Virus record (IMG/VR): IMGVR_UViG_3300046787_000200
Coordinates: 62,001 to 126,000 of that record
Length of the DNA stretch: 64,000 bases
Reading direction: 5' to 3' (one strand)
A model generated the notes under the pieces. The model saw nothing but the letters and a program-made list of their open reading frames with translations. It made no database searches and was not told the origin of the DNA. Each line of letters begins with the position of its first letter. Positions within the stretch are counted from its first letter, which is position 1. Below, piece after piece: positions 4,203 through 36,563 of the stretch. Both the position numbers and the translations under genes were made by a program.

Positions 4203-4246
4203 ATGGTATACGGAACTAAATAAAAAGATCCCGTAATATTATCACA

Positions 4247-5536: not shown

Positions 5537-5548
5537 CGAGAGACATTA

Positions 5549-6730: not shown

Positions 6731-6739
6731 GAAACGAAT

Positions 6740-9362: not shown

Positions 9363-10615
9363 TGGATGAAAAGAAGCTATTTAAAATAAGAGATGAGACT
9401 AGTCCAACTATGTGTTTGGCTAAGTTCCATGAGGCTAGTATTTGGGTTTACTCAGGTAAGATAGCCAGCTGTCACTACACTCCGTTCATACAAGTAGGTA
9501 ATACAGTAGATACATTCTACAATCCTACTGAAAAACGTGAACAACAAAAACGTATGCTTGCAGGAGAACAACCACCTGCATGTGATAGTTGCTGGCGTTA
9601 TGAGAACTTAGGATTGCGTAGTGATAGAACACGTAAGAGCTTGAGCTTCAAGGATCACTTATCAGCAGAAGATTATAAGAATCCTAACTATGTATTCAAA
9701 CCAAAAGCATTAGAGTTAGCTTTTCAAAATACATGTAACTTAGCATGTAGCTACTGTAGTCCACAATTCAGTACAAGCTGGATGAATGATATCAGAGTAA
9801 ATGGTGTTTATCAACAAATCGTTACAGATGATCGTAGACATTATCAAAAAGATATCAATGAAATCAATGAGATGATTGACCCTCCTGACATGACATTGTT
9901 CTGGGAATGGTTTGAAACTGTTGCAACTAGTTTAGAATCTATCCGTGTTTCGGGCGGAGAGCCACTAATGCATGAAGAAGTTTTTCGTGTGTTTGAGATG
10001 ATGACAGAGATGAACCCTAACATTGAATGCGTGATACACAGCAACCTCTGTCAAAAGCCAGTAGTTATGGATAGATTCTTTGATAAGATTAGTGGCTTAA
10101 CTAACTTGCGTATGAACATTAGTAATGAATCTGCAGGTGAAACAGCAGAATTTATACGTGAGGGTATGGTATATACTGAATGGTTAGAAAATATTGAACG
10201 ATTGGCTAATAGTACAGTAAGAGAATTTAGTGTAAGCACAACAGTTAGTGCAATTGCATTACAATCATTAGATCAAATGTATTTGGATATTATTGCTATT
10301 CGTAATCGTAGTAAAGTAAAGCCATATATATCTATCAATATGGTTGATAAGCCAGACTTTCAGGGCTTTGCTTGTTTAACTAGAAGTGAACGTGATTTCT
10401 ATATTGATAAATATACCAAGTTCTATGAATCAATTAACCATGAATTGTTACCAGTTGAACATGAACACTGTGCTAGATTGTTAAAGTTCTTAGATGAAGG
10501 GTTTGTTAAAGAAACACAACCTCAATTGCGTAAAGACAGTGATATCTTTTTTGAACAATATACTAAACGTAGAAACAAGCCAGACAATTTGGCAAAATAT
10601 ATAGGATTAAAATAA
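9362..10615 (+). CDS. N-terminal twitch-domain radical SAM protein
   Basis: CLAKF...SCHYTP...CDSC; CNLACSYC; GGEP. Confidence 0.88.
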   Translation: MDEKKLFKIRDETSPTMCLAKFHEASIWVYSGKIASCHYTPFIQVGNTVDTFYNPTEKREQQKRMLAGEQPPACDSCWRYENLGLRSDRTRKSLSFKDHLSAEDYKNPNYVFKPKALELAFQNTCNLACSYCSPQFSTSWMNDIRVNGVYQQIVTDDRRHYQKDINEINEMIDPPDMTLFWEWFETVATSLESIRVSGGEPLMHEEVFRVFEMMTEMNPNIECVIHSNLCQKPVVMDRFFDKISGLTNLRMNISNESAGETAEFIREGMVYTEWLENIERLANSTVREFSVSTTVSAIALQSLDQMYLDIIAIRNRSKVKPYISINMVDKPDFQGFACLTRSERDFYIDKYTKFYESINHELLPVEHEHCARLLKFLDEGFVKETQPQLRKDSDIFFEQYTKRRNKPDNLAKYIGLK

Positions 10616-11787
10616 TGGAAGAACAGATGTATGATATAAATTGTGTGACGAGATTGCACATTGAGTTATCAAGTAGATGTAATGCTAGTTGCCCTGCATG
10701 TAGTAGAAATCATAGCGGTGGCCCTGTTGCAGAAGATTTAGAACTTACTGAGTTATCAATCGATGATATCAAACGTATGGTTCCAGTAGAGATTGCACGA
10801 AATATAAAAAGTATTAATTACTGTGGCAATGTTGGTGATCCAGGTATGGCACCTGATCTATTAGAAATCATACAATATTTTAGAGAACATTCACCTAAGG
10901 TCGTACAACAAATTAGAACAAACGGTGGAATGCGCAACCCTGAGTATTGGACTAAGTTGGGTAATTTCTTTGCAAGACAAGCAGATCCCAATAATAAGTT
11001 CTTATTTAACATGGCAGGGGTAGTGTTTAGTGTTGATGGATTAGAAGATACTAATCACATTTATCGCAGAGGTGTTAAATGGGAAAAGTTAATTGCTAAC
11101 ATGAGAGCATATAGTGCTACCGGTGCATATGCTATATGGGAGTGGTTGATATTTGAGCACAATCAACATCAAGTTGAAGAAGCAAGAGCATTAGCAAAAG
11201 AATTAAATTTTCAGTTTATTGTTAAGAATCCACTAGGATTCGGTGAATATGATGGTAAAGTTAAGGGCTTATCTGTGTATAACAAAGAAGGTGCGTATGA
11301 GTACTCTATTTGGCCTGCTAATCACAAAGGTCCCAAAGAAGGACCAAACTTTGGTGAGAAAGTAGATTTCACTAAAATGATTAAAACGATTCCTATCATA
11401 AATGAATTCAGTAAAGAATTAGAAAAAACTTCTACAATAAAATGTAAGTCAATTGAACGTAAAGAATCACAAGAAGTTTATATCTCTGCTACTGGATACA
11501 TGCTACCATGTTGTTTCTTGGGAGGTGTATTTGGACAATTTAATAGTTCTTATAGTAGATATCAATTTAATACAATGATTAATGATTATGGATTGGATGT
11601 GTTTAATTTAAACAAACGTTCAATGTTAGAGATAATTAAAGGTCCTGAATTTTCAAAATTCTTTTTAGATGGTTGGAAAGCAGATACGATTGAGAATGGT
11701 AAATTGTTATTTTGTTTAGAAACATGCGGAAATCAATCTGCTATGGATAAATTATATAGAACTAAGATGATAGAGGTATCAAAATGA
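10615..11787 (+). CDS. Radical SAM protein with C-terminal SPASM/twitch cysteines
   Basis: N-terminal CNASCPAC; CGNVGDP in place of GGEP; C-terminal IKC...LPCC...CLETC. Confidence 0.88.
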   Translation: MEEQMYDINCVTRLHIELSSRCNASCPACSRNHSGGPVAEDLELTELSIDDIKRMVPVEIARNIKSINYCGNVGDPGMAPDLLEIIQYFREHSPKVVQQIRTNGGMRNPEYWTKLGNFFARQADPNNKFLFNMAGVVFSVDGLEDTNHIYRRGVKWEKLIANMRAYSATGAYAIWEWLIFEHNQHQVEEARALAKELNFQFIVKNPLGFGEYDGKVKGLSVYNKEGAYEYSIWPANHKGPKEGPNFGEKVDFTKMIKTIPIINEFSKELEKTSTIKCKSIERKESQEVYISATGYMLPCCFLGGVFGQFNSSYSRYQFNTMINDYGLDVFNLNKRSMLEIIKGPEFSKFFLDGWKADTIENGKLLFCLETCGNQSAMDKLYRTKMIEVSK

Positions 11788-12533
11788 GAATAGGTGTATT
11801 TGGTGATAGTTTCGCAGATAGAAACCCATACAATCCAGAAAGTCCCTTTAAGGAAGATGAATCATGGATGAAATGTATGGAAGATTCAGGACATGAAATT
11901 ACTACGTATGGGAAAACTGGTACTTCAACATGGTATTCGTTTCAACAATTCTTAGCACACCATGATCAATTTGATCATGTTATATTCTGTTATTCATCAA
12001 TGCATAGAATACATCATTTGCCAGAAGGACTTGAAGATTTAAGTTTCTTGACCACACCCGATCAACTTTATGAATTGAGAAAAAATAAAAACTTAACTCA
12101 ACGACAAGAATTGGATATAGTAAGAATACTTACAGGTCACGTACCTAACATTAGTACTACGTTTGACTTGTTTGTTAAGCAACATATATTTGATGAAGTT
12201 AATAATCTATGTAGAAATAAAAACATCAAGTTAGTTAATCTACTAACATTTGATGATAGAAAAGAAAAAAATTATTCTATTGACCTAGCGTTAAGAGCAG
12301 GTGATTGTTTATATAACTTATTTGAAGTAAGTCGTAGAGAATTACCTAGTATGGATAGAGTAGATAACAGATGGTGTCATTTATCACACGAATTAAATCT
12401 ATCATTGTCTGTACTATTAAGTCAATCTCTTAACAGTAAAGAATTACGCATTTTAGATTTACGCAAACATCCGGAATTTAATAAAGTTAACTATGATATC
12501 ACCTTGAGGTATATGAATGAGCCAACTACGTAA
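11784..12533 (+). CDS. SGNH/GDSL-like hydrolase or acyltransferase
   Basis: N-terminal FGDSF and late R-x-CH motif. Confidence 0.65.
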   Translation: MRIGVFGDSFADRNPYNPESPFKEDESWMKCMEDSGHEITTYGKTGTSTWYSFQQFLAHHDQFDHVIFCYSSMHRIHHLPEGLEDLSFLTTPDQLYELRKNKNLTQRQELDIVRILTGHVPNISTTFDLFVKQHIFDEVNNLCRNKNIKLVNLLTFDDRKEKNYSIDLALRAGDCLYNLFEVSRRELPSMDRVDNRWCHLSHELNLSLSVLLSQSLNSKELRILDLRKHPEFNKVNYDITLRYMNEPTT

Positions 12534-13263
12534 GATTATCACTTTGGGTGATAGTTTTACGTTTGGACATGGGTGTGCAGACCGTGAATATTACTATGAC
12601 CATGATACTAAAACATTCATAGGTGATCATAGACCTTTTAAAGAAAATATTCCTAGTCAATATTGTTGGCCTACTTTACTTCAGCAACATATGCATGAGG
12701 TTGAAGTTATTAATTTATCGCAACCGGCAAATTCCAATCAGGGACTATTCCGTAACTTATTAACCTATTGTGAAACCAACACAATTAATGAAGGTGATAT
12801 TATCATCTTTAACGGATCATTCCCGGGTAGGATAGACATTGCATCAGGTGCTCGTCCTGAAGTTACTGTTCCTTGGGTCATGGGTTGGGATCACCAATCA
12901 CAAATGGAAAATGAAATTGAATACAATGTTGCTAAAAAAATGTACATAACACATTTATTCAATGATTCAATAGGATATACACAATCATTGTCATCAGTAT
13001 TAGCAACACATGCATTTGCTACAATGTATAAAGCAAAGTATATTTGGTCATTGCCCAATCATGTTTATCCAAAAGAAGTTCTGGATAAACTAAAACCAAT
13101 TAATCATTTACGAATAACAGACTTATGTAAATATGATTTTTCTGGCACTAACACATATGATTTTAACAAAACTTGTTTTGCTCCCGATTATCACGTGAAT
13201 AATTTGGGACATTCTATATACTTGCAAAAACAAATAATCCCCGTCATACAATCCCTTCTATAA
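12517..13263 (+). CDS. SGNH/GDSL-like hydrolase
   Basis: GDSFTFG, NLS-x-P-x-x-SN, DYHVNNLGH. Confidence 0.75.
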   Translation: MSQLRKIITLGDSFTFGHGCADREYYYDHDTKTFIGDHRPFKENIPSQYCWPTLLQQHMHEVEVINLSQPANSNQGLFRNLLTYCETNTINEGDIIIFNGSFPGRIDIASGARPEVTVPWVMGWDHQSQMENEIEYNVAKKMYITHLFNDSIGYTQSLSSVLATHAFATMYKAKYIWSLPNHVYPKEVLDKLKPINHLRITDLCKYDFSGTNTYDFNKTCFAPDYHVNNLGHSIYLQKQIIPVIQSLL

Positions 13264-13271
13264 ATATCGTA

Positions 13272-14621
13272 ATGAATAATAATGAACAAATAGACAATCC
13301 AGACTCTGAATTCGTTGAAAAGAAAGTATTTCCCATACAAAACGAAGCCGCATGCTTGTACAAATGGGCATGGAGTACTATTTTCTTAAGCAGAGGTACA
13401 ACATCAAGTTGCCATAGAGGTCGTCATTGGAGATTGACTGAGGATAACTTCATGGATTTTCATAACCATCACGGTAAATTAGCCGACAGAGAAAAAATGT
13501 CGAGTGGGGAATGGCCTGGTAATGGTTGTGAGTACTGTAGAGATATAGAAAAAGCAGGTGGAACTAGTGATAGATCAGGATTTGTAAATGAATCAATAGA
13601 ACTATTACCACCTGAGTTTGAAGGATATGTACAGCGTATATATGAATATGATACTATCCCGTTAAAAGTAAGTCCTACACTATTAGAAGTTTATTTTAAC
13701 AATGTATGTAATCAATCATGTGTCTATTGCACTCCTGGATTTAGTAGTCAGATTGAACAAGAGGTTCGCAAATACGGGCCTAGCAAGTATAATGAAGATT
13801 ACAGCACATGGCGTCCTGATTCAAAATACGAATTGTATAAAGAAAAGTTTTGGGAATGGATGGCAAAGAATAGTGAGCATGTACAGATATTACAAGTATT
13901 AGGCGGTGAGCCACTATATCAAAAAGAGTTTGAACAATGTTTAGATTTCTTTGACAAGAACCCTAGACCTAATTTAGTATACCGTTCATTTAGTAATCTA
14001 AAACACGATCCTGAAAAGTTTAAAGCAAAGATACAGCGAGTACAAAACTTGATTGATCAAGGTAAATTAAAACGTATGGAAGTTGTATGTAGCATTGATT
14101 GCTGGGGTCCGGAAATTGAATATGTACGTGATGGCTTGATACTAGCCGAATGGGAAGAAAACATGAACACATTGTTAACGACTCCTGGTATGGGAGTATT
14201 AGTTCATGCTACACTTACTGCATTAACGTTGCCTACATTGAATCAATTGATAGAGAAAACAAATGAATGGCGTAAGATAAAAGATACAGTAGGTATCAAT
14301 TGGAATACAGTTGTTAGACCATCAACATTCAATCCATATAATTTTGGTAAATATTTGGCACCGTTTATTGATAGATCGATTGATGCATTAAATTACTATA
14401 GTAACCATGTAGAGAAAGAAAAGTTACAGACACACTTACGTGGTATACAACAACAGTTATTAACTACACCCGCAAATAAAAAAGAAGTTAATGACTTTGC
14501 TAACTTCTTAGATGATATAGACAAACGTAGAAATAGAGATTGGCGAACATTATTTCCGCAAATTGTAGATATTGTAAATATTATAAACAAAGAGGAACCA
14601 GACTATGTTCAAGTGGATTAA
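13272..14621 (+). CDS. N-terminal twitch-domain radical SAM protein
   Basis: CLYKW...SCHRG...CEYC; CNQSCVYC; GGEP; TATAAATA 5 nt upstream. Confidence 0.88.
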   Translation: MNNNEQIDNPDSEFVEKKVFPIQNEAACLYKWAWSTIFLSRGTTSSCHRGRHWRLTEDNFMDFHNHHGKLADREKMSSGEWPGNGCEYCRDIEKAGGTSDRSGFVNESIELLPPEFEGYVQRIYEYDTIPLKVSPTLLEVYFNNVCNQSCVYCTPGFSSQIEQEVRKYGPSKYNEDYSTWRPDSKYELYKEKFWEWMAKNSEHVQILQVLGGEPLYQKEFEQCLDFFDKNPRPNLVYRSFSNLKHDPEKFKAKIQRVQNLIDQGKLKRMEVVCSIDCWGPEIEYVRDGLILAEWEENMNTLLTTPGMGVLVHATLTALTLPTLNQLIEKTNEWRKIKDTVGINWNTVVRPSTFNPYNFGKYLAPFIDRSIDALNYYSNHVEKEKLQTHLRGIQQQLLTTPANKKEVNDFANFLDDIDKRRNRDWRTLFPQIVDIVNIINKEEPDYVQVD

Positions 14622-14709: not shown

Positions 14710-15518
14710 TTCCGCTGAATAATTTATTGGACTCACAAGACTTTAGTGAGGTAATTCCGTATACAAAAGTCGAGCATAAAACATTATCAATTGATGCATA
14801 TACTACTGATTTTGCATCATTTGATGATATGAAATATGCTGAGTACTGGCAAGGAGAGCAGTTCAATTATTTTTATAATAGATATGGATTCAGAGATATT
14901 GATGTTATCCCTGAATCCATAGACATAGGTGCATTTGGTTGTAGCTTCACTGCCGGGTTAGGATTACCGGAACATATGCTTTGGCATAAACTGTTAGGCA
15001 CCTCATCATACAATTTTGGTGTGTCGGGTGCTAGTACTAAATCAGTGTTTGATTTGTTTTTAATAACATCTAAACATGTTAAAATGAAAAATGCTATATT
15101 TTTACTACCAAGTTTAAATAGAGTTCAAATTGCGGCGACAAATCCATTATTGTCCAGAATATCTTATTTGTCAATTGTCCCTTCGCATAAAAGTGAATTA
15201 GCATTAGTACATGGGGTTGATAGTGAGTTGGTATACAAAGTATTACCGGAAGAAGAACAGATAAAAAACTTTAGAAACGATGCATACATCATAGATCATA
15301 TAGCAAAAGAACGTGGTATTAATGTATATCTGTCTACTTGGGACAGTCTTACATATGAAGTATTGGCACAATTAAAATTTACACATTGTACTGTATTGCC
15401 AGTATGGGGTTCTCTCTCACAGGAACAAGCAGAATCAGATTTAGCTAGAGATAAAAAACATCCGGGGCCAATACATCATCAGCAATGGGTTGACAAAATT
15501 AAACATTTAATAAAATGA
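14706..15518 (+). CDS. SGNH-like protein
   Basis: NRYGFRD, FGCSFTAG, NFGVSGAS, ARDKKHPG. Confidence 0.7.
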   Translation: MIPLNNLLDSQDFSEVIPYTKVEHKTLSIDAYTTDFASFDDMKYAEYWQGEQFNYFYNRYGFRDIDVIPESIDIGAFGCSFTAGLGLPEHMLWHKLLGTSSYNFGVSGASTKSVFDLFLITSKHVKMKNAIFLLPSLNRVQIAATNPLLSRISYLSIVPSHKSELALVHGVDSELVYKVLPEEEQIKNFRNDAYIIDHIAKERGINVYLSTWDSLTYEVLAQLKFTHCTVLPVWGSLSQEQAESDLARDKKHPGPIHHQQWVDKIKHLIK

Positions 15519-17020
15519 ACTACATAGGAATATCAGCCGGATTCCATGATGCGGCATTATCAGTTATTGACGATAGTGGCAATATATTATTTGCTGGACA
15601 TAGTGAACGTTATAATAAACAGAAACATACAAAACACTTATCAATTGGTATAGTTGAAGATGCATTATCGTATTGCAATAGCAGAGATATACAGATTCAT
15701 TACTATGAACGCCCGTGGATGAAGTTTCTACGACAAGTTCGTTCAGGTGAAAAGCCTAAGTTATCTAGTCTATTGCTTAAAGAAACAATTGGTACTGGAT
15801 TACTACACAAACTACAAGATGGCCGTGGGGGTAAAGTACATACTCACAATCATCATTTAAGTCATGCGGCTGCAGGGTTTCAAACAAGTCCATATGATGA
15901 TGCTACAGTAGTTGTTATTGATGCTATTGGTGAGTTCGACACTATCAGTATTTGGAACGCATACTATGACAAGAACGGTGTAGCACAATACAAAAAACTA
16001 TGGGGACAGAAGTACCCAGATAGCATTGGCTTATTCTATTCGGCAATGACAGAACGAGTGGGTTTGCGACCATTAGATGAAGAATACATTTTGATGGGCA
16101 TGGCGGCATATGGTAAGTCAAACCTAAAACAAGAATTAAAAGAAATGTCCGATACATTAATACGATCATATAAAGATATTACTTTTAAAGACAATCTACA
16201 TACGGGTGTGTCAGATGATTTGCTTAAAGATACAGACCATATGGATATTGCTTGTAGTACACAATTGATCGCAGAACAATTGATTGCATCTGTTATCAGT
16301 AGAGCAAAAAGTTTAAGTAATAGTAAGAACTTAGTATATGGTGGTGGCGTAGCATTAAATTGTTTAGCAAATAGATTATTAGGAAACTTTTATGACAACA
16401 TTTGGATTATGCCTAATCCTGGCGATGCTGGTTCTAGTCTTGGAGCGGCTTGTCTTGGTTATGGCAAACGTATTAACTGGACTGATGCTTACCTTGGTCA
16501 TAATATTCTTGGTCAGTATCCTGTCAATCAGTTATTGGATCATCTTACTACCACTGGCATTGTTGGTGTGGCTAATGGTCGTGCTGAGTTCGGACCTAGA
16601 GCCCTTGGACATAGAAGCCTACTTGCAGACCCAAGAGGAACAGAAATAAAGGATAAAGTAAATGAAATTAAACGTAGGCAAAAGTTTAGACCCTTTGCGC
16701 CAGTCATTCTGGAGGAGTATGCTGATATGTATTTTGATATGCCTCGTGGCTTCAGTAACAGTAGGTATATGCAAGTCATCGCTCGTTGCAGGCATCCTGA
16801 CTTATTTCCTGCTATCGTTCATAATGATGGTACTAGTAGGGTACAGACTGTGCCAAGGGATGGCTCCGGAATACGAGGACTATTAGAGAAATGGTATGTA
16901 TTGACAGGTTGCCCGATGTTGCTTAATACTAGCTTAAACATACGAGGCGAGCCAATGGTAAATGACCGAAACGATGCAGATCGCTTTGAAATAATGTATA
17001 ATGTAAAAGTTATATCATAA
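15515..17020 (+). CDS. Carbamoyltransferase (NodU/CmcH/TobZ family)
   Basis: GFHDAA, HHLSHAAA, GGVALNC, PGDAG, EFGPRALGHRSLLADPR, RPFAP, LLNTSLN. Confidence 0.95.
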   Translation: MNYIGISAGFHDAALSVIDDSGNILFAGHSERYNKQKHTKHLSIGIVEDALSYCNSRDIQIHYYERPWMKFLRQVRSGEKPKLSSLLLKETIGTGLLHKLQDGRGGKVHTHNHHLSHAAAGFQTSPYDDATVVVIDAIGEFDTISIWNAYYDKNGVAQYKKLWGQKYPDSIGLFYSAMTERVGLRPLDEEYILMGMAAYGKSNLKQELKEMSDTLIRSYKDITFKDNLHTGVSDDLLKDTDHMDIACSTQLIAEQLIASVISRAKSLSNSKNLVYGGGVALNCLANRLLGNFYDNIWIMPNPGDAGSSLGAACLGYGKRINWTDAYLGHNILGQYPVNQLLDHLTTTGIVGVANGRAEFGPRALGHRSLLADPRGTEIKDKVNEIKRRQKFRPFAPVILEEYADMYFDMPRGFSNSRYMQVIARCRHPDLFPAIVHNDGTSRVQTVPRDGSGIRGLLEKWYVLTGCPMLLNTSLNIRGEPMVNDRNDADRFEIMYNVKVIS

Positions 17021-17028
17021 GTATATGT

Positions 17029-20000
17029 ATGTTAAGAGATGTATTTTATTTCGGAGATAAACCCAACGTTCACCCAAGAGAAAAGTTTGCAGTAGATTTA
17101 GCTGATGCTAAACGACAGTCAACCACTGAGCACTTTTGGATAATTAACGAACATTGTAATTATAAAGATTTTGATTGGGACTGGGACTTTGATTTCCTAC
17201 CCGATGAAGATGTGTGGGCAGAAGAACACAACAATGTTTGGCCTAGCCCCTATCAGAAAGATAGTGGCACTTGGTTATGCAATGCAGACAATGATGAACC
17301 ACTAACAATCTATCGTGCAGACGTAGATCCTATTCCATTAAAAGATGAAGTAACAAGTAACTGGAAGATCATTGAATATATTGAAAAAGATAAATTTGAT
17401 TTTAAATGGCATCCAGACCCAACTGACCCTCCCTACATATATGTATTTGGTAATGAATGGTATCCCGGGACTATTATGCCCACAGTTGAATATCATGTTG
17501 AAGGTGCAACAGAACGTAAATATGTAACTGATCAAATAGCTCAACTATTACCAATGCCAATGTTGTTCAATATCATATATGAACCGGCGGAGTTTGATTA
17601 TAGTTGGAGACCAGACCCTACAGCACCACCTTATATCTATGTATTTGGTAACAATCAATATCCTGCAAGTGTGATGCCAACGGTTGAGTTTCATGTTGAA
17701 GGTGCAACAGAACGTAAGTTTATTGAAAATATTGTTCCTAAGTTGGCAGCAAGACCTGCAGAATTTGATGTATTAGAAGATATAGATCAGTCATCATTTG
17801 ATTTTAGTTGGGTCCCTGATCCTACTGCGCCTCCTTATATATATGCTTGGGGTAATCAATGGAACAAGCCAGAAGATAAAATTAGTGTTCAGTATGTAGC
17901 AGAAGGTGCGACAGAATACAAATACATGGATGCACGTACTAAACGTAAGGAGTCAATGAATAATTGGAACATACCACCTAATATGTTTCAAAATAAGTTT
18001 GATTTTAGTTGGGAACCTAGTCCGGCTGATCTACCGTTCATATATCAATTTGGTACTCAATGGCAAAAAACACATGGTCCTCAATATATTGTAGAAGGCG
18101 CTACCGAGATAAAATATGTTGACGTATTAAAAGCAGAAGTTGTATGTACTGAGTTTGAAAATTGGCAAGTACCTAGAAACATTGACCAATCTAAGTTTGA
18201 TTTTAGTTGGCATCCCGATAGCACAGAAGAACCATACATCTATCAATTTCCTGATCAGTGGACCAGAACCGGTGGACCTAGATATGTCGTACCCGGCGCA
18301 ACTGAAATCAAGTACATAGATGTGCAGACAGCAACAGCTAAACATGACAAGACACACTGGGTTATACCTGATGATATTGATGTTAGTGAGTTTGATTTTA
18401 GTTGGCACCCCGACATAGATCACGCACCATTGATATATCAATTTGGAACTCAGTGGCAACGAACTAGTGGACCTAAGTTTTATGCAGTCGGTTGCACAGA
18501 AGATAGTGATATACAATATGTTGACATTATCAAAGCTAAAGCTTTGCCTAATAAAGAATTATGGCAAACATTAATCTCAGTAGATAATTTTGATTATAGC
18601 TGGCATCCAGATGAAACTGAAGAACCCTACATATATGTTTTTGGCAATCAATGGAATCGTGCTGAAGTAGAACCTACATTAATATATGAGATGCCTGGAG
18701 CAACACATAAAAAGTATATTAATGACATTGGTATTAAAGCATCTGCATATGCTGAAGGTTGGGAAACAATTGAAGATATTGAATCATTTGATTACAGTTG
18801 GAGACCTGATCCAGGGGATCCCGCATACATATATGTATTTGGTAATAAGCAATATGATGGCACAATTATGCCCACAGTTAAATTACATATCAAAGACGCT
18901 ACACAAGAAAAGTTTGTTGATGATATTGTTGCAACATTGGCACAACGTCCCGATCTATTTAAAAACACAGAACTAATCAAAGACTTTGACTATTCATGGA
19001 GACCAAACCCTAAAGACCCACCGTATGTATATCAGTTCGGGACACAATGGGCTAAAACACATGGACCTCAGTTTATTATACCTGAAGCTATTGAGACAAA
19101 ATTTATTAACTATCCAGTTGCAACAATATTGCCTGATATGACACACTGGGAAATACCAGAGAATGTTGATGTTACTAAGTTTGATTTTAGCTGGCACCCA
19201 GATGGTACTGCACCCGCATACATCTATCAATTTGGCACACTGCTTGATGATAAAGATGGTCCTAGATATATTACACCTGATAATGATGGTATAGTTGTTA
19301 ATTTAGAGCGTAAAGAAATCATATTAGAAGAATTGATATTCCCTAAGTACAATATAAAGACCACACTAGAAGATTTAATAAACGAACATGAAGGTGAAAT
19401 CTTTTGGGCTATCAACCCTGAACTTGACTACTCAAACTTTGATTTCAAGTGGGTACCTGATAAACAAAATGTCTATCACATTAATGCATTCGGTAGTAAA
19501 GATAATATCAACACACAGACTTATTTTGTCAATGGTAAAATGTGGCAGAAAGGCTACCGTGATATTAATTACGTTGAAGATAAAGTAATTGATGTTAGAA
19601 CTAAAATTGATATGTTCTTTGTTGACAGAGGTAATAGTCAATCACAAGAACGATTCAATAAGCTAAAGGCAAAGTTTGATAACATCACTAAAACACGATA
19701 CTTGAACAGTTGGGTTGATACAATTAATCGGTGTATTACTAAGTCAAGTACAAACTTGTGCTGGATATTGAACAGTGAGCTTGACTATGATGATTTTGAG
19801 TTTGATTACTATCCTAGTCCATGGCAAATGCGCATGGTTCATGTGTTCGGTACTCAGTGGAGTCATTGGGGCACAACGTTTATGGTTAACAAACATAGCT
19901 TCAGTGAAGATACAAAATATGTTAAAGTTATTGAACATTTAAGTAATCTTAACTTTGTCAAACGTAAGACTGCTAAAGCAACTAATTGTTTGTATGACAT

Positions 20001-21312
20001 ATATTTGATAGACCATGGAAATGAGTTACCAAAAGACATTAAAGGACATAATTATACTACGGTCAAATATGAACGTAGTTACTTAAACACATTTAAGAAT
20101 TTAGTAAAGACTTTACCGGACAAGAAAGAACATTATATTTGGATATGCAGTAGCGTATGTGATTATGAAAACTTTGATTTTGGTTATATTTGTGATCCAT
20201 ATGCCAAAGATCAATTACATGTATTCCCAAGCGACAAACAAAAGTTTGGAGATACTTTCCTAATTGATGTAAATAAGTTACGCACATTAATTGATGATAT
20301 GATTATGTTGGAAGATTATGAGAAGGTCAACTATAATCAACATCAAAGGGCGAAACGTTTACCTGCCCCTATTATTATTACGAAAGAAGATACACATGTT
20401 AACGATATTCATACTGACTTTGATTGGCCTTACGCTACGTTTGTCACGGAAGACAATAAAGAAATACAAGTAACAGATGTAGAACCAATGAGTTTATGGA
20501 CACCTGATAGTAAAAATATTATTATTACTAGTACCGGTGCAACACGAATCATTGTACCTAAAGAAGCAAAAGATTATGTAGAGAATGAGTTGTATGATTA
20601 TCCATACATCAGCCGTAGTAAATCTCTAGTTAAATCTCAGCCACTGGATATAGTCTTCCTAAGCAACGGTGAAACTGGTGCTGACGAGAACTACGAACAT
20701 TTACTGAAAGTGACTACGGGATTAAAGAATAGAGTTGTGCGTGTAGATGGCGTTAATGGTCGTGTACAAGCCTATCATGCGGCAGCAGAAGCAAGTAACA
20801 CGCCATGGATGTTCACCGTGTTTGCTAAGTTACGTGTTGATGATAAATTTGATTGGTCATGGCAACCTGATAGACTACAAGTACCCAAGCATTATATCTT
20901 TAATGCAACAAACCCTGTCAATGGATTAGAGTATGGTCACCAAGCTATGATTGCTTATAACAAGAAGATTACATTAGCTAATACTGGTAGAGGGCTTGAC
21001 TTCACATTAGATGACGAACATGAAGTTGTTGAAATGAATAGCGGTATAGCTATGTACAATACAGATGCCTGGAGTACATGGCGTACTGCATTTAGAGAAG
21101 CACTAAAACTAAGAGCCGATACTAGCCAAGCAAGTAAAGATAGATTAGATGCATGGTTAAATAAAGGCGAAGGGAACTTTGCCCAATATAGTTGTGAAGG
21201 TGCGCAACATGCTATAGAATACTATGAATCAGTTAATGGTGATTTAGATAAATTACGTCTAAGTTATGATTGGCCTTGGTTGAAAGAGTATTTTAATAAT
21301 AAATACAATTGA
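17029..21312 (+). CDS. 1427-aa protein with internal tandem repeats and C-terminal glycosyltransferase(GT-A)-like domains
   Basis: About 10 FD(F/Y)SWxPDx4PYIYxFG repeats; C-terminal DIVFLSNGE...RVDGVNG...YHAAA...WRTAFRE. Confidence 0.75.
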   Translation: MLRDVFYFGDKPNVHPREKFAVDLADAKRQSTTEHFWIINEHCNYKDFDWDWDFDFLPDEDVWAEEHNNVWPSPYQKDSGTWLCNADNDEPLTIYRADVDPIPLKDEVTSNWKIIEYIEKDKFDFKWHPDPTDPPYIYVFGNEWYPGTIMPTVEYHVEGATERKYVTDQIAQLLPMPMLFNIIYEPAEFDYSWRPDPTAPPYIYVFGNNQYPASVMPTVEFHVEGATERKFIENIVPKLAARPAEFDVLEDIDQSSFDFSWVPDPTAPPYIYAWGNQWNKPEDKISVQYVAEGATEYKYMDARTKRKESMNNWNIPPNMFQNKFDFSWEPSPADLPFIYQFGTQWQKTHGPQYIVEGATEIKYVDVLKAEVVCTEFENWQVPRNIDQSKFDFSWHPDSTEEPYIYQFPDQWTRTGGPRYVVPGATEIKYIDVQTATAKHDKTHWVIPDDIDVSEFDFSWHPDIDHAPLIYQFGTQWQRTSGPKFYAVGCTEDSDIQYVDIIKAKALPNKELWQTLISVDNFDYSWHPDETEEPYIYVFGNQWNRAEVEPTLIYEMPGATHKKYINDIGIKASAYAEGWETIEDIESFDYSWRPDPGDPAYIYVFGNKQYDGTIMPTVKLHIKDATQEKFVDDIVATLAQRPDLFKNTELIKDFDYSWRPNPKDPPYVYQFGTQWAKTHGPQFIIPEAIETKFINYPVATILPDMTHWEIPENVDVTKFDFSWHPDGTAPAYIYQFGTLLDDKDGPRYITPDNDGIVVNLERKEIILEELIFPKYNIKTTLEDLINEHEGEIFWAINPELDYSNFDFKWVPDKQNVYHINAFGSKDNINTQTYFVNGKMWQKGYRDINYVEDKVIDVRTKIDMFFVDRGNSQSQERFNKLKAKFDNITKTRYLNSWVDTINRCITKSSTNLCWILNSELDYDDFEFDYYPSPWQMRMVHVFGTQWSHWGTTFMVNKHSFSEDTKYVKVIEHLSNLNFVKRKTAKATNCLYDIYLIDHGNELPKDIKGHNYTTVKYERSYLNTFKNLVKTLPDKKEHYIWICSSVCDYENFDFGYICDPYAKDQLHVFPSDKQKFGDTFLIDVNKLRTLIDDMIMLEDYEKVNYNQHQRAKRLPAPIIITKEDTHVNDIHTDFDWPYATFVTEDNKEIQVTDVEPMSLWTPDSKNIIITSTGATRIIVPKEAKDYVENELYDYPYISRSKSLVKSQPLDIVFLSNGETGADENYEHLLKVTTGLKNRVVRVDGVNGRVQAYHAAAEASNTPWMFTVFAKLRVDDKFDWSWQPDRLQVPKHYIFNATNPVNGLEYGHQAMIAYNKKITLANTGRGLDFTLDDEHEVVEMNSGIAMYNTDAWSTWRTAFREALKLRADTSQASKDRLDAWLNKGEGNFAQYSCEGAQHAIEYYESVNGDLDKLRLSYDWPWLKEYFNNKYN
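17395..19290 (+). repeat. Ten diverged ~60-70 aa protein repeats
   Basis: Recurrent FD(F/Y)SW(H/R)PD, P(Y/F)IY(V/Q)FG, GATE-x-K(Y/F); recurrent ttgattttagttgg at DNA level. Confidence 0.9.
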
Positions 21313-21648
21313 AGTTATTGCTGTATGAAGCAAAGAGAAAAGTGTCTTGGACGGGGGTGCGAATCCCCCCAGGTCCACCATAAAACACATTAAGCCTGGG
21401 TTGCCGGGTCAGTAGACATGCAGGGTTACCTTGCGTCACTTCTGAAAAATAGTGTGTTTTATGATGGGCCTGACCTAGATTCGACAGGGCAACAAGTAAA
21501 TTAGTGGACAGCTCGGCAACGCAGAAGCCGTCAGGGTTGGGGGTTCCCGACTATAGAAGCACAAAAGTAAACGCAAACGACTCACAGTTCGCATTAGCAG
21601 CCTAAACGCCGCTTAGGGTAAGACATACCTCGTAACAGAAAATCAGAT
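21311..21648 (+). ncRNA. ssrA: Circularly permuted (two-piece) tmRNA; tag peptide ANDSQFALAA
   Basis: Acceptor piece first (T-arm GGGGG-TGCGAAT-CCCCC, CAGGTCC-ACCA ending 21380), intervening segment 21381-21465, then 5' end GGGCCTG at 21466 (G3.U70 Ala identity), GATTCGAC, tag frame 21573-21605; outer ends approximate. Confidence 0.92.
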
Positions 21649-21649
21649 G

Positions 21650-21674
21650 GGGCACTTAGGTGCCCTTTTCTTTT
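21650..21674 (+). terminator. Intrinsic terminator after tmRNA
   Basis: GGGCAC-TTAG-GTGCCC followed by TTTTCTTTT. Confidence 0.85.
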
Positions 21675-21701
21675 GCTATCATACAAGTTGTGATATATAA
21701 T
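21673..21701 (+). promoter_or_regulatory. Sigma70-type promoter of the tRNA
   Basis: TTGCTA-17 nt-TATAAT ending 10 nt before the tRNA. Confidence 0.7.
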
Positions 21702-21711: not shown

Positions 21712-21786
21712 GCGATTGATACTCGGTGGACGAGAAGGAGCCTCTAAAACTCTGATTTGCGGGTTCGATTCCCGTCAATCGCACCA
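21712..21786 (+). tRNA. Amber suppressor tRNA (anticodon CTA at 21744-21746)
   Basis: Acceptor GCGATTG/CAATCGC + ACCA; D-stem CTCG/CGAG; anticodon arm GGAGC-CTCTAAA-ACTCT (one C.A mismatch); T-arm GCGGG-TTCGATT-CCCGT. Confidence 0.88.
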
Positions 21787-24248: not shown

Positions 24249-25133
24249 ATGAAGAAAATCGCAATAGCGACATTATTAGTTGCATCAACAATGGTAGCAA
24301 CTGCACAAGTTAGATTAACAGGTAAAGTTAGCGAGTTCGTTGACAATACTAAAACAGGTGCAGTAAGCAAGACCAGTCTAGTAGCAGATCCAACAAGTAA
24401 CATTACCTTCTCAGCAACTGAAAAGATTATTGGTACTTTGACAGCTAATGTAGTACTAGATACAAGTTTAGCGGCTAATGATCCTATCGGTGGTGCTGAT
24501 ACTAAATTGGGCAATCGTCAATCTACAATTGGCTTGTCTAGTAAAGTTGGTAGCATTGACCTAGGTCGTAATCTACACAGTCATTTCTTAGCAATTACTA
24601 ACAATGATGCATTCGGCACATTGTATGGTTCTATTGCAGGTGATGTACATAATGTGCGTGGTGTTCGTGTCAGTAATGGTACGTTCCTTGCATTGAAGCC
24701 TATTATGGGCGTAACTGCAACTTATGACCGCACACACAATGGTGTAGGAACTGAAGCATCTAGTTACAGCGCAAGCGCATCAATGTTTGGTGTTAATGCA
24801 ACTGTTGCACAATTCACACAAGGTATTGAGAAAAGTACAGTGATTGGTGCAAGTGCAAAACTAGGTACTGCTAAAGTATTTTACACACATAGTGATGACA
24901 AAGGTGTAGTAGCAAGCACAGGTGATCTAGTCGGTGTAAGTCAACAATTTGGTGCAGTAACGGCAAAAGCAAGTTATGGTAAAACCAATACTGATGTTAA
25001 GGCTTACGCATTAGGTGCTGATTATAATTTGAGCAAGCGTACTATTGTTGGAGCAACATATCGTAATGTTGACGCAGTAGGTACAGCAAGTGATATTAAA
25101 CAAGTTGGAGTTGGTGTAACACACCGCTTCTAA
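24249..25133 (+). CDS. Gram-negative porin (betaproteobacterial type)
   Basis: Signal peptide; NRQSTIGL, IDLGR, ADYNLSKRT, C-terminal VGVTHRF. Confidence 0.88.
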   Translation: MKKIAIATLLVASTMVATAQVRLTGKVSEFVDNTKTGAVSKTSLVADPTSNITFSATEKIIGTLTANVVLDTSLAANDPIGGADTKLGNRQSTIGLSSKVGSIDLGRNLHSHFLAITNNDAFGTLYGSIAGDVHNVRGVRVSNGTFLALKPIMGVTATYDRTHNGVGTEASSYSASASMFGVNATVAQFTQGIEKSTVIGASAKLGTAKVFYTHSDDKGVVASTGDLVGVSQQFGAVTAKASYGKTNTDVKAYALGADYNLSKRTIVGATYRNVDAVGTASDIKQVGVGVTHRF

Positions 25134-31219: not shown

Positions 31220-31885
31220 ATGAGTTTTACACGACATGTTGGTAAACACGGTGATAGAAAAGTTGCAATAGTATTCAGAGAAGTACCTGGTGAAGCACAC
31301 ATGTGCTTGGTAACATATACTGAGACATTGAATCAACACGTACATGATCCATTAATTAAATGCATTGAATCTGATATCGGTCAGAATAGCGAACATTTAG
31401 CCGATGCATTGAATAGAACATACGCTAAAGATGGTAGACCAATCCTACAAGTATTGCACCTAGAAGGTCAATTAAAGAAAGTTCAAACAAGTCAAATTGT
31501 TATGACACCTTCGCCAAATCAAACGATTCGTTTAGATGAATTGAATAAGATTTTAGATGAGATGCAACAAGGTGAAAGTGCTGTTAAACGTCTACAAGAA
31601 CTAGATGATAGCCGAGGATTACAAGATCCGGCTGATGTAGTCCGTAGAATGCGTGGAAATCAGAATCCAGTCACACCTACTGGTGATTTGCTAGGTGACC
31701 AAGCACTTGCTAAACAACGTATCGATCAGGCACAAAAGATGGAACGTGAAGCTAAAGGCTTAATGGCTGAAGCACAACGTCTAATGGATGAAGCTAAATC
31801 ATTAGATCCATCAGTGGCCCCTGCTCCGGCAGTAGAAGTTAAAGCAACAAAAGCTAGAAAAACTAGAGCAAAAGTTAGTGTCTAA
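31220..31885 (+). CDS. Hypothetical protein with coiled-coil C-terminus
   Basis: Long ORF with GAGGAG SD. Confidence 0.8.
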   Translation: MSFTRHVGKHGDRKVAIVFREVPGEAHMCLVTYTETLNQHVHDPLIKCIESDIGQNSEHLADALNRTYAKDGRPILQVLHLEGQLKKVQTSQIVMTPSPNQTIRLDELNKILDEMQQGESAVKRLQELDDSRGLQDPADVVRRMRGNQNPVTPTGDLLGDQALAKQRIDQAQKMEREAKGLMAEAQRLMDEAKSLDPSVAPAPAVEVKATKARKTRAKVSV

Positions 31886-32181
31886 TGTCACCAGAATTTA
31901 TCGAAAAATGGGAACACATCCTTGAAGATGTTGAGAAAAACAAAATCCCTGTACAATTTATTAAAAAGCTAATTATTAAGCTTCAAGGTAAAAAGCAACA
32001 GACTATCAACATTCAAAAGTTTTTAGAACAAGGATTGGACCCAGAACAAATAGAAGATGCGGTTAGTCGCAAGCTAGATGAACTAGATGAATTGATAGTG
32101 AGTGTAGAATTTATTCTCAATGTTCAAAGTATTGCAGACACGGTACAACCAGAGACAGACAGACTATTAGGTAAATTATGA
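31885..32181 (+). CDS. Hypothetical protein
   Basis: TAATG-coupled ORF. Confidence 0.75.
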   Translation: MSPEFIEKWEHILEDVEKNKIPVQFIKKLIIKLQGKKQQTINIQKFLEQGLDPEQIEDAVSRKLDELDELIVSVEFILNVQSIADTVQPETDRLLGKL

Positions 32182-32633
32182 AATTAATTGTAGCGTGTGA
32201 TCCGAAAGGTGGAATAGGCTATGAAAATAAATTGCCCTGGAGTAAAATCGAGGGCGATTTGCCAAGATTCAAAGAATTGACTAACGGCGGTGTTGTAGTA
32301 ATGGGTAGAAACACATGGGAAAGTCTTCCCTTTAAACCCTTACCCAATAGAATAAATTTTATTGTTACTAGCCAAAAGGGAATGTATCCAAGAAGTTGTT
32401 TTACTATTCCTAGCTTAGATTACATTAGTAATTTCAAAAACGCATGGTTAATAGGTGGAGCCAAACTAATCAATAGTAGTTGGGATGTGATAGATGAAAT
32501 ACATCTTACGAAGACATTTACCGAATATACTTGTGATACCTTCATTAATCTGTTACAATTAGAAAATGATTTTACGTGTTGGTTTAAAGAACAACACAAT
32601 GATCATACTTATGAAATTTGGAAAAGAAAATGA
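32178..32633 (+). CDS. folA: Dihydrofolate reductase
   Basis: IGYENKLPW, DLPRFKELT, VMGRNTWESL, PLPNR, IGGA. Confidence 0.95.
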   Translation: MKLIVACDPKGGIGYENKLPWSKIEGDLPRFKELTNGGVVVMGRNTWESLPFKPLPNRINFIVTSQKGMYPRSCFTIPSLDYISNFKNAWLIGGAKLINSSWDVIDEIHLTKTFTEYTCDTFINLLQLENDFTCWFKEQHNDHTYEIWKRK

Positions 32634-34100: not shown

Positions 34101-34353
34101 TGACGAAGCCAAAACAATCACTTACACAGTTAAAAAACTTAATGTAGGTGATGTTGAAGACCCTGATATTATTGTAGGACAATATATATGGGAGTGGCAA
34201 GAATCTGAAGCAGGTAAATGGATTATGGAAAACTCAAGACCTTTACCTAGTTGGCATCGTAGTATTAATCATGTAACATATGGTTATCAATATGATATCA
34301 GAGCATATCTTACACCTAAACAAATAACTTATTTTGAATTGAAATATAAATGA
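34060..34353 (+). CDS. Hypothetical protein
   Basis: GDVEDPD...GKWIMENS; ends YFELKYK. Confidence 0.7.
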   Translation: MKVMDQLKQLWQSDDEAKTITYTVKKLNVGDVEDPDIIVGQYIWEWQESEAGKWIMENSRPLPSWHRSINHVTYGYQYDIRAYLTPKQITYFELKYK

Positions 34354-36560: not shown

Positions 36561-36563
36561 TTG

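What the first reader, a model, noticed from the sequence alone, without database searches (positions are those of the whole stretch)
21298..21674. Phage-encoded circularly permuted two-piece tmRNA
Seen: the CCA-bearing acceptor half precedes the 5' half. The stem GGGCCTG/CAGGTCC has the G3.U70 alanine determinant, helix CAGGGCA/TGTCTTG joins the pieces, and the tag reads ANDSQFALAA-stop. A late-type AATAAATA box (21298) lies upstream and a terminator downstream. The T-loop is non-canonical (TGCGAAT). Known: permuted tmRNAs occur in Alphaproteobacteria, some cyanobacteria and a betaproteobacterial lineage; the phage tmRNAs I know of are mostly one-piece. Inference: late-expressed ribosome rescue, perhaps replacing host tmRNA cut by defence nucleases, and possibly an independent permutation event. 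No smpB is seen in the window.
Basis: partly seen in the sequence, partly recalled or inferred. Interest (0 to 1): 0.8.

Follow-up and report, generated by a model that had tools for sequence, protein, structure and literature searches.

The report
Phage-encoded two-piece tmRNA gene
A large freshwater phage carries an intact gene for a split (two-piece) ribosome-rescue RNA; phage genes of this kind have been reported before, and this one belongs to a widespread family known only from uncultivated phages.

Summary
ARAGORN and two Rfam models (tmRNA_permuted 112.8 bits, beta_tmRNA 106.1 bits) call a circularly permuted tmRNA at 21313-21675 (+). The window is a jumbo, T4-related phage from freshwater.

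The gene is one member of a large family. At least 120 IMG/VR contigs carry the identical 32-nt acceptor half. No cultured phage and no cellular species representative has it, apart from two phage-like MAG contigs. Four results argue for function:
- compensatory changes in the helices that join the two pieces
- synonymous variation in the tag codons
- conservation that stops at the predicted mature ends
- abundant metatranscriptome contigs of both pieces

The odd T-loop (G55) always comes with UAG instead of UGG in the D-loop analogue.

The promoter lines up with the sigma-70-type promoters of relatives, not their late-type boxes. The RNA types as beta-lineage, so an independent permutation is unlikely. 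Phage two-piece tmRNAs are already documented (Buchholz 2022), so this is a new member of a known kind.

The most interesting by-product concerns relatives, not this copy. Their excised spacer often holds protein-coding ORFs, including a Pfam Oxidored-like domain.

The parts
21280..21309 (+). Sigma-70-type promoter candidate TTGAAA-18 nt-TACAAT. It lies inside the 3' end of the upstream 1427-aa ORF, whose stop is at 21310-12.
   Evidence: 10 of 12 consensus positions; the -10 hexamer is 5 nt before the conserved TTATTGCTG, the same register as the perfect TTGACA-17-TATAAT promoters of about 30 relatives.
21298..21305 (+). It overlaps the sigma-70-type promoter and its role is doubtful.
   Evidence: present. 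(out of register with the TAAATA boxes of relatives). (motif not enriched in the window).
21313..21380 (+). Acceptor piece, about 68 nt. 5' strands of the joining helices at 21320-23, 21330-31 and 21343-49. T-stem 21353-57/21365-69. T-loop 21358-64, with G at position 55 (21359). Acceptor 3' strand 21370-76. A73 at 21377. CCA at 21378-80.
   Evidence: The 5' limit comes from the start of conservation against L035 and from the starts of RNA contigs at 21312-21317.
21381..21465 (+). Intervening spacer, 85 nt, predicted to be excised. Its ends (about 21381-92 and 21450-65) extend the acceptor stem into a 22-bp helix. The interior forms hairpins and has no SD/ORF in this copy.
   Evidence: fold. 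(interior unrelated in the closest relative). (spacer ends pair across the family). (no ORF). (continuous in a DNA run; no RNA contigs laid here).
21466..21675 (+). Coding piece, about 210 nt. Acceptor 5' strand 21466-72. D-loop analogue 21473-84, with UAG at 21476-78. 3' strands of the joining helices at 21485-91, 21504-05 and 21509-12. Hairpin region 21514-52. Then the tag, a helix over the stop codon, and the terminator.
21573..21605 (+). Tag reading frame: GCA resume codon, ANDSQFALAA, TAA stop.
   Evidence: across 66 unique 10-codon tags, third-position synonymous variation at the N, D, F, L and A codons.
21649..21675 (+). Intrinsic terminator (GGGGCAC-UUAG-GUGCCC followed by a T run). 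It is also the 3' hairpin of the beta-type model.

Best explanation
This is a functional ssrA gene of the circularly permuted kind, carried by a jumbo T4-related freshwater phage.

Proposed mechanism:
1. One precursor is transcribed. The most likely promoter is the sigma-70-type one at 21280-21309, read by host RNA polymerase. Transcription ends at the terminator at 21649-75.
2. In the precursor, the acceptor stem and the spacer ends form one long helix.
3. Host RNase P cuts 5' of G21466, and 3'-end enzymes trim back to CCA at 21380. This releases the 85-nt spacer.
4. The roughly 68-nt acceptor piece and the roughly 210-nt coding piece stay together through the acceptor stem and the joining helices.
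5. G3:U70 and A73 direct charging with alanine.
6. With host SmpB and EF-Tu, the RNA enters stalled ribosomes. Translation resumes at GCA 21573, adds ANDSQFALAA and stops. The ribosome is freed and the protein is marked for host proteases.

The likely benefit is added ribosome-rescue capacity during infection.

Shown here: the anatomy, the pairing of the two pieces by covariation, selection on the tag at the peptide level, and transcription of the family in nature.

Inferred: the processing enzymes, alanylation, use of host SmpB, the timing of expression, and the benefit to the phage.
For: Detection:
- ARAGORN and Rfam both call it.

Phage context:
- TerL, a gp32-like SSB, a UvsX-like recombinase, a helicase and gp9/10 are in the window.
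- TerL is about 50% identical to those of jumbo phages.

Family:
- At least 120 IMG/VR contigs carry the identical acceptor half.
- The coding piece always follows the acceptor half, with a spacer of 25-491 nt.

Structure:
- Two-sided compensatory changes occur in six pairs of the helices that join the pieces.
- The T-stem has compensatory variants.
- The spacer ends co-vary: a mean of 9.05 bp against 6.0 in the control, and U at position -1 in 67 of 77.

Coding:
- The tag shows synonymous codon variation, and 63 of 81 tags end in ALAA.

Mature ends:
- Against L035, the two mature pieces are nearly identical while the promoter, the spacer interior and the downstream DNA differ.

Expression:
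- Three metatranscriptomes hold contigs of both pieces, with depth up to about 5900. Contigs spanning the spacer reach only 4.8-22.

T-loop:
- The G55 T-loop also occurs in cellular tmRNAs and is always paired with UAG.
Against: - No SmpB gene was found in the window, although the window is only part of the genome.
- The host is unknown.
- The RNA runs hold relatives, not this phage, and they are assembler contigs. Because the spacer is hypervariable, its absence from the RNA contigs proves little about processing.
- Pseudoknots were not established.
- The distal joining helix has one U-U mismatch (21319:21513).
- No experiment shows alanylation or tagging.
- The sigma-70-type promoter is a 10/12 match with an 18-nt spacer, weaker than the perfect promoters elsewhere in the window.
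Confidence: 0.85

Rival explanations
1. Counter-defence spare part: the phage tmRNA replaces host tmRNA that is cut or inactivated by a host defence nuclease during infection.
For: Only indirect evidence. The family differs from the canonical tmRNA in the T-loop/D-loop analogue (G55 with UAG). It is kept by many unrelated-looking phage contexts.
Against: No defence or anti-defence gene was linked to it. No nuclease that targets tmRNA was identified. The G55/UAG variant also occurs in ordinary cellular tmRNAs. A plain increase in rescue capacity explains the same data.
Confidence: 0.08
2. Selective proteolysis tool: the phage uses its own tmRNA mainly to tag host proteins made from phage-degraded mRNAs, so their amino acids are recycled. 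This was proposed for phage Melnitz (PMC9004378).
For: Tags end in ALAA, the usual protease-recognition ending. A sigma-70-type promoter would allow early expression. The hypothesis comes from the literature.
Against: Sequence alone cannot separate this from general ribosome rescue. Some close relatives use late-type boxes instead, which argues against a strictly early role.
Confidence: 0.15
3. Decoy or inhibitor: the RNA titrates host SmpB or blocks host trans-translation. This was proposed for the tRNA-like-domain-only molecule of mycobacteriophage DS6A (PMC4131195).
For: No phage smpB is in the window, so the RNA must compete for host SmpB.
Against: The whole mRNA-like domain, the resume codon, the tag frame and the stop codon are conserved, with synonymous variation. 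A decoy would not need any of them.
Confidence: 0.04
4. Passenger or remnant: a piece of host ssrA picked up by imprecise excision or kept as an attachment site, with no role in the phage.
For: Temperate phages often integrate into ssrA and carry fragments of it (background in PMC9004378).
Against: The gene is complete. No integrase was seen. It is conserved in hundreds of viral contigs with covariation. Apart from two phage-like MAG contigs, none of the 185,579 species-representative genomes has this acceptor half.
Confidence: 0.02

Closest known systems
Phage-encoded two-piece tmRNAs (OM43 phage Melnitz, Pelagibacter phages HTVC008M and Mosig, Caulobacter phiCbK-like phages, Synechococcus myophages and others; Buchholz et al. 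2022, PMC9004378)
   Same: A permuted ssrA gene in a large, lytic-type aquatic phage, sitting among tRNA genes, with no phage smpB required. ARAGORN detects it as tmRNA*.
   Different: Those described in detail are alpha- or cyano-type, and Melnitz has a glutamine riboswitch. This gene is beta-type, has no riboswitch, carries G55/UAG, and has no relative among 50,697 deposited phage genomes apart from a weak 80-nt match to Xanthomonas phages X1 and BUDD.
Betaproteobacterial two-piece tmRNA (Rfam RF01850; Sharkady and Williams 2004)
   Same: It passes the family's covariance model over its full length (106 bits, and up to 150 bits for relatives). The match includes the joining helices, the hairpin after them, an ANDxxFAxAA-type tag and the 3' hairpins.
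   Different: It is carried by phages, not by a betaproteobacterial chromosome. The T-loop has G55 where the consensus has U55, and the D-loop analogue reads UAG where the consensus has UGG. The spacer is hypervariable, and in relatives it is often protein-coding.
Caulobacter crescentus two-piece tmRNA (Keiler, Shapiro and Williams 2000)
   Same: The same architecture and the same presumed maturation: one precursor cut by tRNA-processing enzymes into an acceptor piece and a coding piece held together by base pairing. In Caulobacter this was shown experimentally (from my own knowledge and).
   Different: It belongs to the alpha lineage and is chromosomal. Function is demonstrated there and only inferred here.
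Xanthomonas phage X1 / BUDD permuted tmRNA (OQ427096, unannotated)
   Same: The only deposited phages with detectable DNA similarity, about 80% over the acceptor piece. ARAGORN and RF04321 (76.6 bits) call a permuted tmRNA there.
   Different: The tag is different (VAANDADYSVARYA). It does not reach the beta_tmRNA gathering score. It is not a member of this family.

Membership tests
tmRNA (SsrA) | tRNA-like domain: 7-bp acceptor stem with G3:U70, discriminator A73, 3' CCA | tested here: met
   21466-72 pairs with 21370-76. G21468 pairs with U21374. A73 is 21377 and CCA is 21378-80.
tmRNA (SsrA) | T-arm: 5-bp stem and a 7-nt T-loop of the UUCRANY type that contacts the D-loop analogue | tested here: met
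   The stem and the loop length are canonical. The loop reads UGCGAAU, with G at position 55. The D-loop analogue has UAG instead of UGG, as in 35 of the 36 cellular G55 tmRNAs whose 5' half could be located. The T-stem shows compensatory variants across the family.
tmRNA (SsrA) | Tag reading frame: Ala resume codon, hydrophobic C-terminus, stop codon | tested here: met
   21573-21605 encodes ANDSQFALAA-stop. Family-wide synonymous variation is present, and 63 of 81 tags end in ALAA.
tmRNA (SsrA) | Long helix (P2) that links the tRNA-like and mRNA-like domains | tested here: met
   Six pairs carry two-sided compensatory changes across 83 unique sequences (the partner coordinates printed there are 1 too high).
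tmRNA (SsrA) | Pseudoknot(s) flanking the tag | tested here: inconclusive
   Only nested hairpins were predicted or modelled. Relatives have alternative short and long versions of the region before the tag. No pseudoknot test was made.
tmRNA (SsrA) | Works with SmpB, is charged with alanine, and tags proteins | not testable with these tools
   No SmpB was found among the 51 Pfam-scanned ORFs of the window. The rest of the genome and the host are unknown.
Permuted (two-piece) tmRNA, Rfam RF04321 | Gene order is acceptor (3') half, then spacer, then 5' half with the tag; score at or above the gathering score | tested here: met
   112.8 bits against 47. ARAGORN calls tmRNA*. The order holds in every relative with enough flanking DNA.
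Permuted (two-piece) tmRNA, Rfam RF04321 | The precursor is cut into two RNAs and the spacer is discarded | tested here: inconclusive
   Conservation stops at the predicted ends. RNA contigs cover the two pieces and not the spacer. However, those runs hold relatives whose spacers differ, and contigs do not map RNA ends.
Beta-type two-piece tmRNA, Rfam RF01850 | Full-length match to the lineage-specific covariance model at or above 84 bits | tested here: met
   106.1 bits over model positions 1-331. 16 of 20 relatives score 88-150 bits.
Beta-type two-piece tmRNA, Rfam RF01850 | Resides in a betaproteobacterial chromosome | tested here: not met
   The context is a phage. Among 185,579 species genomes, the G55 acceptor half occurs only in two phage-like MAG contigs binned as Bacteroidota. 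Caveat: the scan required G55, so a host version with a canonical T-loop would have been missed.
T4-type late promoter | TATAAATA box about 6-8 nt before the transcript start, with no -35 element; the motif is used upstream of late genes in the same genome | tested here: inconclusive
   AATAAATA is a 7/8 match. It is out of register with relatives' TAAATA boxes. The motif is not enriched (5 found, 11.1 expected). No gp55-like factor was seen in the window.

The most novel reading that the evidence does not exclude
This gene may belong to a lineage of beta-type two-piece tmRNAs that is maintained in phages and circulates among freshwater phages independently of the host's own tmRNA type. In this lineage the excised spacer has become an expression slot.

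In many relatives, though not in this copy, the spacer starts with a Shine-Dalgarno sequence and an ATG, and it holds an ORF that fills it. Examples are membrane-like peptides, a GNAT acetyltransferase and a CxxCxxCC protein.

In another common class the spacer encodes a Pfam Oxidored-like domain. The only in-frame start codon for that ORF lies inside the tRNA-like acceptor piece. The tmRNA precursor would then also serve as a messenger RNA.
Probability: 0.3. Interest if true: 0.65.

Novelty: new member of a known kind. Interest (0 to 1): 0.4.

Why it matters
For the window itself, the result is a sound annotation. A jumbo freshwater phage carries an intact two-piece tmRNA, and an amber-suppressor tRNA sits next to it. 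This adds to the evidence that large aquatic phages bring their own translation-maintenance RNAs.

At the family level three points matter:
- The family has hundreds of members in IMG/VR and none among cultured phages. It therefore has no experimental model.
- Its near-invariant acceptor half, with the paired G55/UAG change, is a natural test of the T-loop to D-loop contact in tmRNA.
- Beta-type permuted tmRNAs are recorded in MAGs of many non-proteobacterial phyla and even archaea (tmRNA database, PMC11915505). Binned contigs from phages like this one may account for them.

If the spacer ORFs of relatives are truly expressed, a stable-RNA precursor that doubles as an mRNA would be a new way for phages to pack genes.

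Tried and rejected
- Near and distant DNA searches of deposited phage genomes found no relative except an 80-nt match to Xanthomonas phages X1 and BUDD. Those carry a different permuted tmRNA.
- A plasmid search found nothing.
It showed which cells use G55, but it could not fetch betaproteobacterial two-piece tmRNAs. The direction of transfer between phages and Betaproteobacteria therefore could not be tested by a tree.
- TAG recoding was considered because of the tRNA with a CUA anticodon, and rejected for this window. Stops are TAA 42, TGA 33 and TAG 3. ORFs cover 93% of the + strand under the standard code. The one in-frame TAG junction (36558-60) is followed by a normal ATG start.
- The identity of the suppressor tRNA could not be assigned by similarity to 251 tRNAs from related loci.
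- Host inference from the phage porin failed, because its nearest clusters are themselves viral.
- The two MAG contigs binned as Bacteroidota look phage-like, so they are not evidence for a host.
- A literature search for the tag sequences found nothing.
- The paper that defines the beta lineage (PMC516066) is not held.
- The single-sequence MFE fold mispairs the distal joining helix, so the comparative structure was preferred.
- The metatranscriptome overlay could not fix RNA ends, because only assembler contigs of relatives were available.
Full report
**1. What is there**

- ARAGORN reports a permuted tmRNA (tmRNA*) at 21288-21696 on the + strand, with the tag ANDSQFALAA.
- Rfam gives two matches above gathering score. 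RF04321 tmRNA_permuted scores 112.8 bits against 47. RF01850 beta_tmRNA scores 106.1 bits against 84, over model positions 1-331.

Coordinates in the window:

| Feature | Position |
|---|---|
| Joining-helix 5' strands | 21320-23, 21330-31, 21343-49 |
| T-stem | 21353-57 / 21365-69 |
| T-loop UGCGAAU | 21358-64 |
| Acceptor 3' strand | 21370-76 |
| A73 | 21377 |
| CCA | 21378-80 |
| Spacer | 21381-21465 |
| Acceptor 5' strand | 21466-72 (G21468 pairs with U21374) |
| D-loop analogue | 21473-84 |
| Joining-helix 3' strands | 21485-91, 21504-05, 21509-12 |
| Tag | 21573-21605 |
| Terminator hairpin | 21649-66, then a T run |

The precursor folds with the acceptor stem extended by the spacer ends into a 22-bp helix, 21370-92 / 21450-72. 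The fold's z-score is -3.3.

**2. Context**

The window is phage DNA.
- It encodes a large terminase, a virion protein, a gp32-like SSB, a UvsX-like recombinase, a DnaB-like helicase and a T4 gp9/10-like baseplate protein.
- Nearly all genes are on one strand, and GC content is about 35%.
- TerL is about 50% identical to those of jumbo phages: Phosso, PA5oct, Atu_ph07 and the Rak2-like group.
- No deposited phage is close at the DNA level.
- The same stretch is held by freshwater, lake and estuary metagenomes.
- No SmpB was found among 51 ORFs scanned against Pfam.

**3. A large family**

- The exact 32-nt acceptor half (window:21349-21380) occurs in at least 120 IMG/VR contigs of 4-364 kb.
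- A second scan, anchored on the coding piece, again hit the limit and brought in 82 further loci.
- Wherever enough DNA is present, the coding piece follows the acceptor half. The spacer is 25-491 nt long.
- All twenty relatives tested match RF04321, and sixteen also pass beta_tmRNA at 88-150 bits.
- Only 35 of 122 loci share any protein with the window within their flanks. The gene therefore sits in varied contexts, often among tRNA genes.
- Deposited phage genomes have no member of the family. The only DNA hit is a different permuted tmRNA, unannotated, in Xanthomonas phages X1 and BUDD.
- Among 185,579 species-representative genomes, the phage's acceptor half occurs only in two short MAG contigs. 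Their genes look phage-like.

**4. Evidence that it is functional**

- *The pieces pair.* In 83 unique sequences, six base pairs of the helices that join the two pieces show two-sided compensatory changes. An example is C21321:G21511 changing to U:A in 14 sequences (the partner coordinates printed there are 1 too high).
- *The T-stem co-varies.* The wider sample has compensatory T-stem variants: GGGGG/CCCCC, GCGGG/CCCGC, AGGGG/CCCCT, AGGAG/CTCCT and AAGGG/CCCTT.
- *The tag is under selection as a peptide.* Asn, Asp, Phe, Leu and Ala codons vary at the third position while the residues stay the same. 63 of 81 unique tags end in ALAA.
- *Conservation marks the mature ends.* Against the closest relative, L035, the two mature pieces are almost identical. 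The promoter region, the spacer interior and the downstream DNA are unrelated.
- *The spacer ends form a processing helix.* They pair with each other across 47 distinct end sequences. The mean is 9.05 bp against 6.0 when ends from different spacers are combined. The base before G1 is U in 67 of 77. This fits a substrate for tRNA-type processing.
- *The family is transcribed.* In three metatranscriptomes, contigs at least 85% alike cover 21305-21388 and 21452-21640 and nothing in between. Depth reaches about 5900, while contigs spanning the spacer reach only 4.8-22. A DNA run covers the spacer evenly.

The last point shows transcription of the family. It supports processing only weakly, because those runs hold relatives whose spacers differ.

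**5. The unusual T-loop**

G at position 55 is the norm for the family. The canonical U55 version of the 32-mer occurs in only 3 viral contigs, and those belong to another family.

The same loop occurs in cellular tmRNAs of Elusimicrobia, several candidate-phyla groups, a Nitrospirales MAG and Rhodobacter capsulatus.
- In 35 of the 36 cellular cases where the 5' half could be located, the D-loop analogue reads UAG. The phage family reads UAG as well.
- The Rfam consensus and the U55 phage contigs read UGG.

I read this as covariation of the tertiary 18:55 contact, with A/G replacing G/U. That reading is an inference.

**6. Promoter and timing**

Relatives have one of three things immediately upstream of the conserved 5' end TTATTGCTG:
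- a perfect TTGACA-17-TATAAT promoter, with its -10 hexamer 5 nt before that motif
- a TAAATA box 4 nt before it
- the 3' end of a tRNA gene

The window has TTGAAA-18-TACAAT with its -10 hexamer exactly 5 nt before the motif.

TATAAATA is not enriched in the window (5 found, 11.1 expected). Perfect sigma-70 promoters are strongly enriched (5 found, 0.2 expected).

Expression by host RNA polymerase is therefore the better reading, although a late start cannot be excluded. L035 has nearly the same RNA behind a TAAATA box, so promoter class changes between close relatives.

**7. What is already known**

- Two-piece tmRNAs are established in Alphaproteobacteria, in a betaproteobacterial lineage and in some cyanobacteria.
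- They are also documented in phages. Buchholz et al. (PMC9004378) describe one in OM43 phage Melnitz. In their survey of 18,146 phage genomes, 53 of 133 unique tmRNAs were permuted, and 50 of those came from marine or aquatic phages. Hosts included Caulobacter, Synechococcus, Pelagibacter, Stenotrophomonas, Citrobacter and Cellulophaga.
- Huge phages from metagenomes carry both tmRNAs and SmpB (PMC7162821).
- The 2025 tmRNA database holds 79 phage sequences. It also lists beta-type permuted genes scattered over MAGs of Bacteroidota, Bacillota, Acidobacteriota, Patescibacteria and some archaea, and its authors suspect misbinning (PMC11915505). Binned phage contigs of the present family are a plausible source (inference).

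The finding is therefore a new member of a known kind. An independent permutation event is not supported, because the RNA matches the lineage-specific beta model over its full length.

**8. Seen in relatives: cargo in the spacer**

The window's 85-nt spacer has no ORF. Longer spacers in relatives often do.
- Many begin, right after CCA, with TAAGGA and an ATG at +11 to +14, and they hold an ORF that fills the spacer.
- A sense ORF covers at least 70% of the spacer in 12 of 20 unique spacers of 141-500 nt, and in 12 of 30 of 84-140 nt. On the antisense strand the counts are 1 and 0. Shuffles give 0.1 and 1.1.
- The products include membrane-like peptides of 23-60 aa, a GNAT acetyltransferase (28.5 bits) and a CxxCxxCC protein (26.6 bits). 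Proteins of 100-151 aa that start MRINEI or a close variant match no family.
- At least 18 unique sequences have a 109-115-nt spacer that encodes a Pfam Oxidored-like domain, at 36-45 bits against a cut-off of 24.
- That frame has no start codon inside the spacer. It is continuous with the ATG inside the acceptor piece (window equivalent 21325-27), and three nucleotide-divergent classes keep this arrangement.
- In the window the same frame stops after 22 codons.

The tmRNA database paper mentions only a tRNA gene and a repeat element inside intervening sequences, as isolated cases. I found no report of spacer ORFs, but my literature search was limited.

**9. Verdict**

This is a real and almost certainly functional two-piece tmRNA gene of the beta type, carried by a jumbo freshwater phage.

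The inferences of late expression and independent permutation are not supported, and the defence-related role is untested.

Interest is moderate. The kind is known, but the family is large, has no cultured member and shows some unexpected traits.

Noticed in passing
window 21712-21786 (+), with a promoter-like site at 21673-21701: A tRNA with anticodon CUA, an amber suppressor that ARAGORN labels 'Pyl', lies 36 nt after the tmRNA terminator behind its own TTGCTA-17-TATAAT (Rfam tRNA 35.7 bits). TAG ends only 3 of 78 ORFs in the window, and I saw no sign of TAG recoding. None of the 122 related loci has such a tRNA. Which amino acid it carries could not be assigned.
   Followed up: partly
Related loci, e.g. 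L033, L035, L053, L078, L015, L060 (spacer between the CCA and the GGGCCTG of the tmRNA gene): In relatives, spacers of 84 nt or more often start with TAAGGA and an ATG at +11 to +14, and they hold an ORF that fills the spacer. The products include membrane-like peptides, a GNAT acetyltransferase, a CxxCxxCC protein, and 100-151-aa proteins that start MRINEI or a close variant. These ORFs are far more frequent than on the antisense strand or in shuffles.
   Followed up: partly
L165:240-434(-), L167:7826-8023(+), L170:807-1004(+), L047:1944-2153(+): A common spacer class encodes a Pfam Oxidored-like domain (PF09791, 36-45 bits). The ORF has no start codon in the spacer. It is in frame with the ATG inside the tmRNA acceptor piece, so it runs through the T-arm, the CCA and the spacer, and it ends in the coding piece.
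   Followed up: partly
window 21359 and 21476-78; loci L121-L158, L160-L162: tmRNAs with G at T-loop position 55 have UAG instead of UGG in the D-loop analogue. This holds for the phage family and for cellular tmRNAs of Elusimicrobia, candidate-phyla bacteria and Rhodobacter capsulatus (35 of 36 cellular cases). It looks like covariation of a tertiary contact.
   Followed up: yes
Upstream of the tmRNA in related loci (e.g. L100 and L076 versus L035 and L055): The same RNA gene sits behind perfect sigma-70 promoters in some phages, behind T4-late-like TAAATA boxes in others, and directly after a tRNA gene in others. Promoter class changes even between close relatives.
   Followed up: partly
window 560-14621 (+): About thirteen tandem genes of 250-450 aa. 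Those tested carry radical SAM and SPASM domains. A carbamoyltransferase (15515-17020) and a 1427-aa protein with no family match (17029-21312) follow them. This is an unusually large paralogous array for a phage.
   Followed up: no
window 24249-25133 (+): A phage-encoded Gram-negative porin (Porin_4, E 1e-22). Its nearest protein clusters are themselves viral, so this appears to be a phage porin family. Homologues lie next to the tmRNA in 13 related loci.
   Followed up: partly
window 25468, 27278, 55320, 55559, 59358 (+): Five perfect TTGACA-N16-18-TATAAT promoters (0.2 expected). Four of them share the extended form TTGACAATAAAT...TGCTATAAT. They are probably strong early promoters.
   Followed up: no
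window 35496-36560 and 36561-37553 (+): Two ORFs in the same frame, separated only by a TAG stop at 36558-60. Homologues of the first are present in related loci (L116, L117). The second opens with a CxxxCxxC motif, typical of radical SAM enzymes. It has a normal ATG one codon after the TAG, so I read them as two genes. Readthrough by the neighbouring suppressor tRNA was not excluded.
   Followed up: no
L159 2977-3427 (Xanthomonas phage X1, OQ427096, about 120978-121428): An unannotated permuted tmRNA (tag VAANDADYSVARYA; RF04321 76.6 bits) lies in a gap between hypothetical genes of a deposited 200-kb phage genome.
   Followed up: yes
window about 31220-42566 (+): ThyA (33201-34100) and DHFR (32178-32633) were placed directly. 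Pfam also found sugar-nucleotide enzymes (two epimerase/dehydratase-type proteins, a DegT-type aminotransferase) and a methyltransferase. The batch scan did not show which ORFs these are, so their positions are only roughly known. They could serve DNA or surface-glycan modification.
   Followed up: no
Literature: PMC11915505, Supplementary Table S2: Beta-type permuted tmRNAs are listed in MAGs of Bacteroidota (23), Bacillota (7), Acidobacteriota (5), Patescibacteria (5) and some archaea. The two MAG contigs found here with this family's acceptor half are phage-like. Binned phage contigs may therefore explain part of that scatter.
   Followed up: partly
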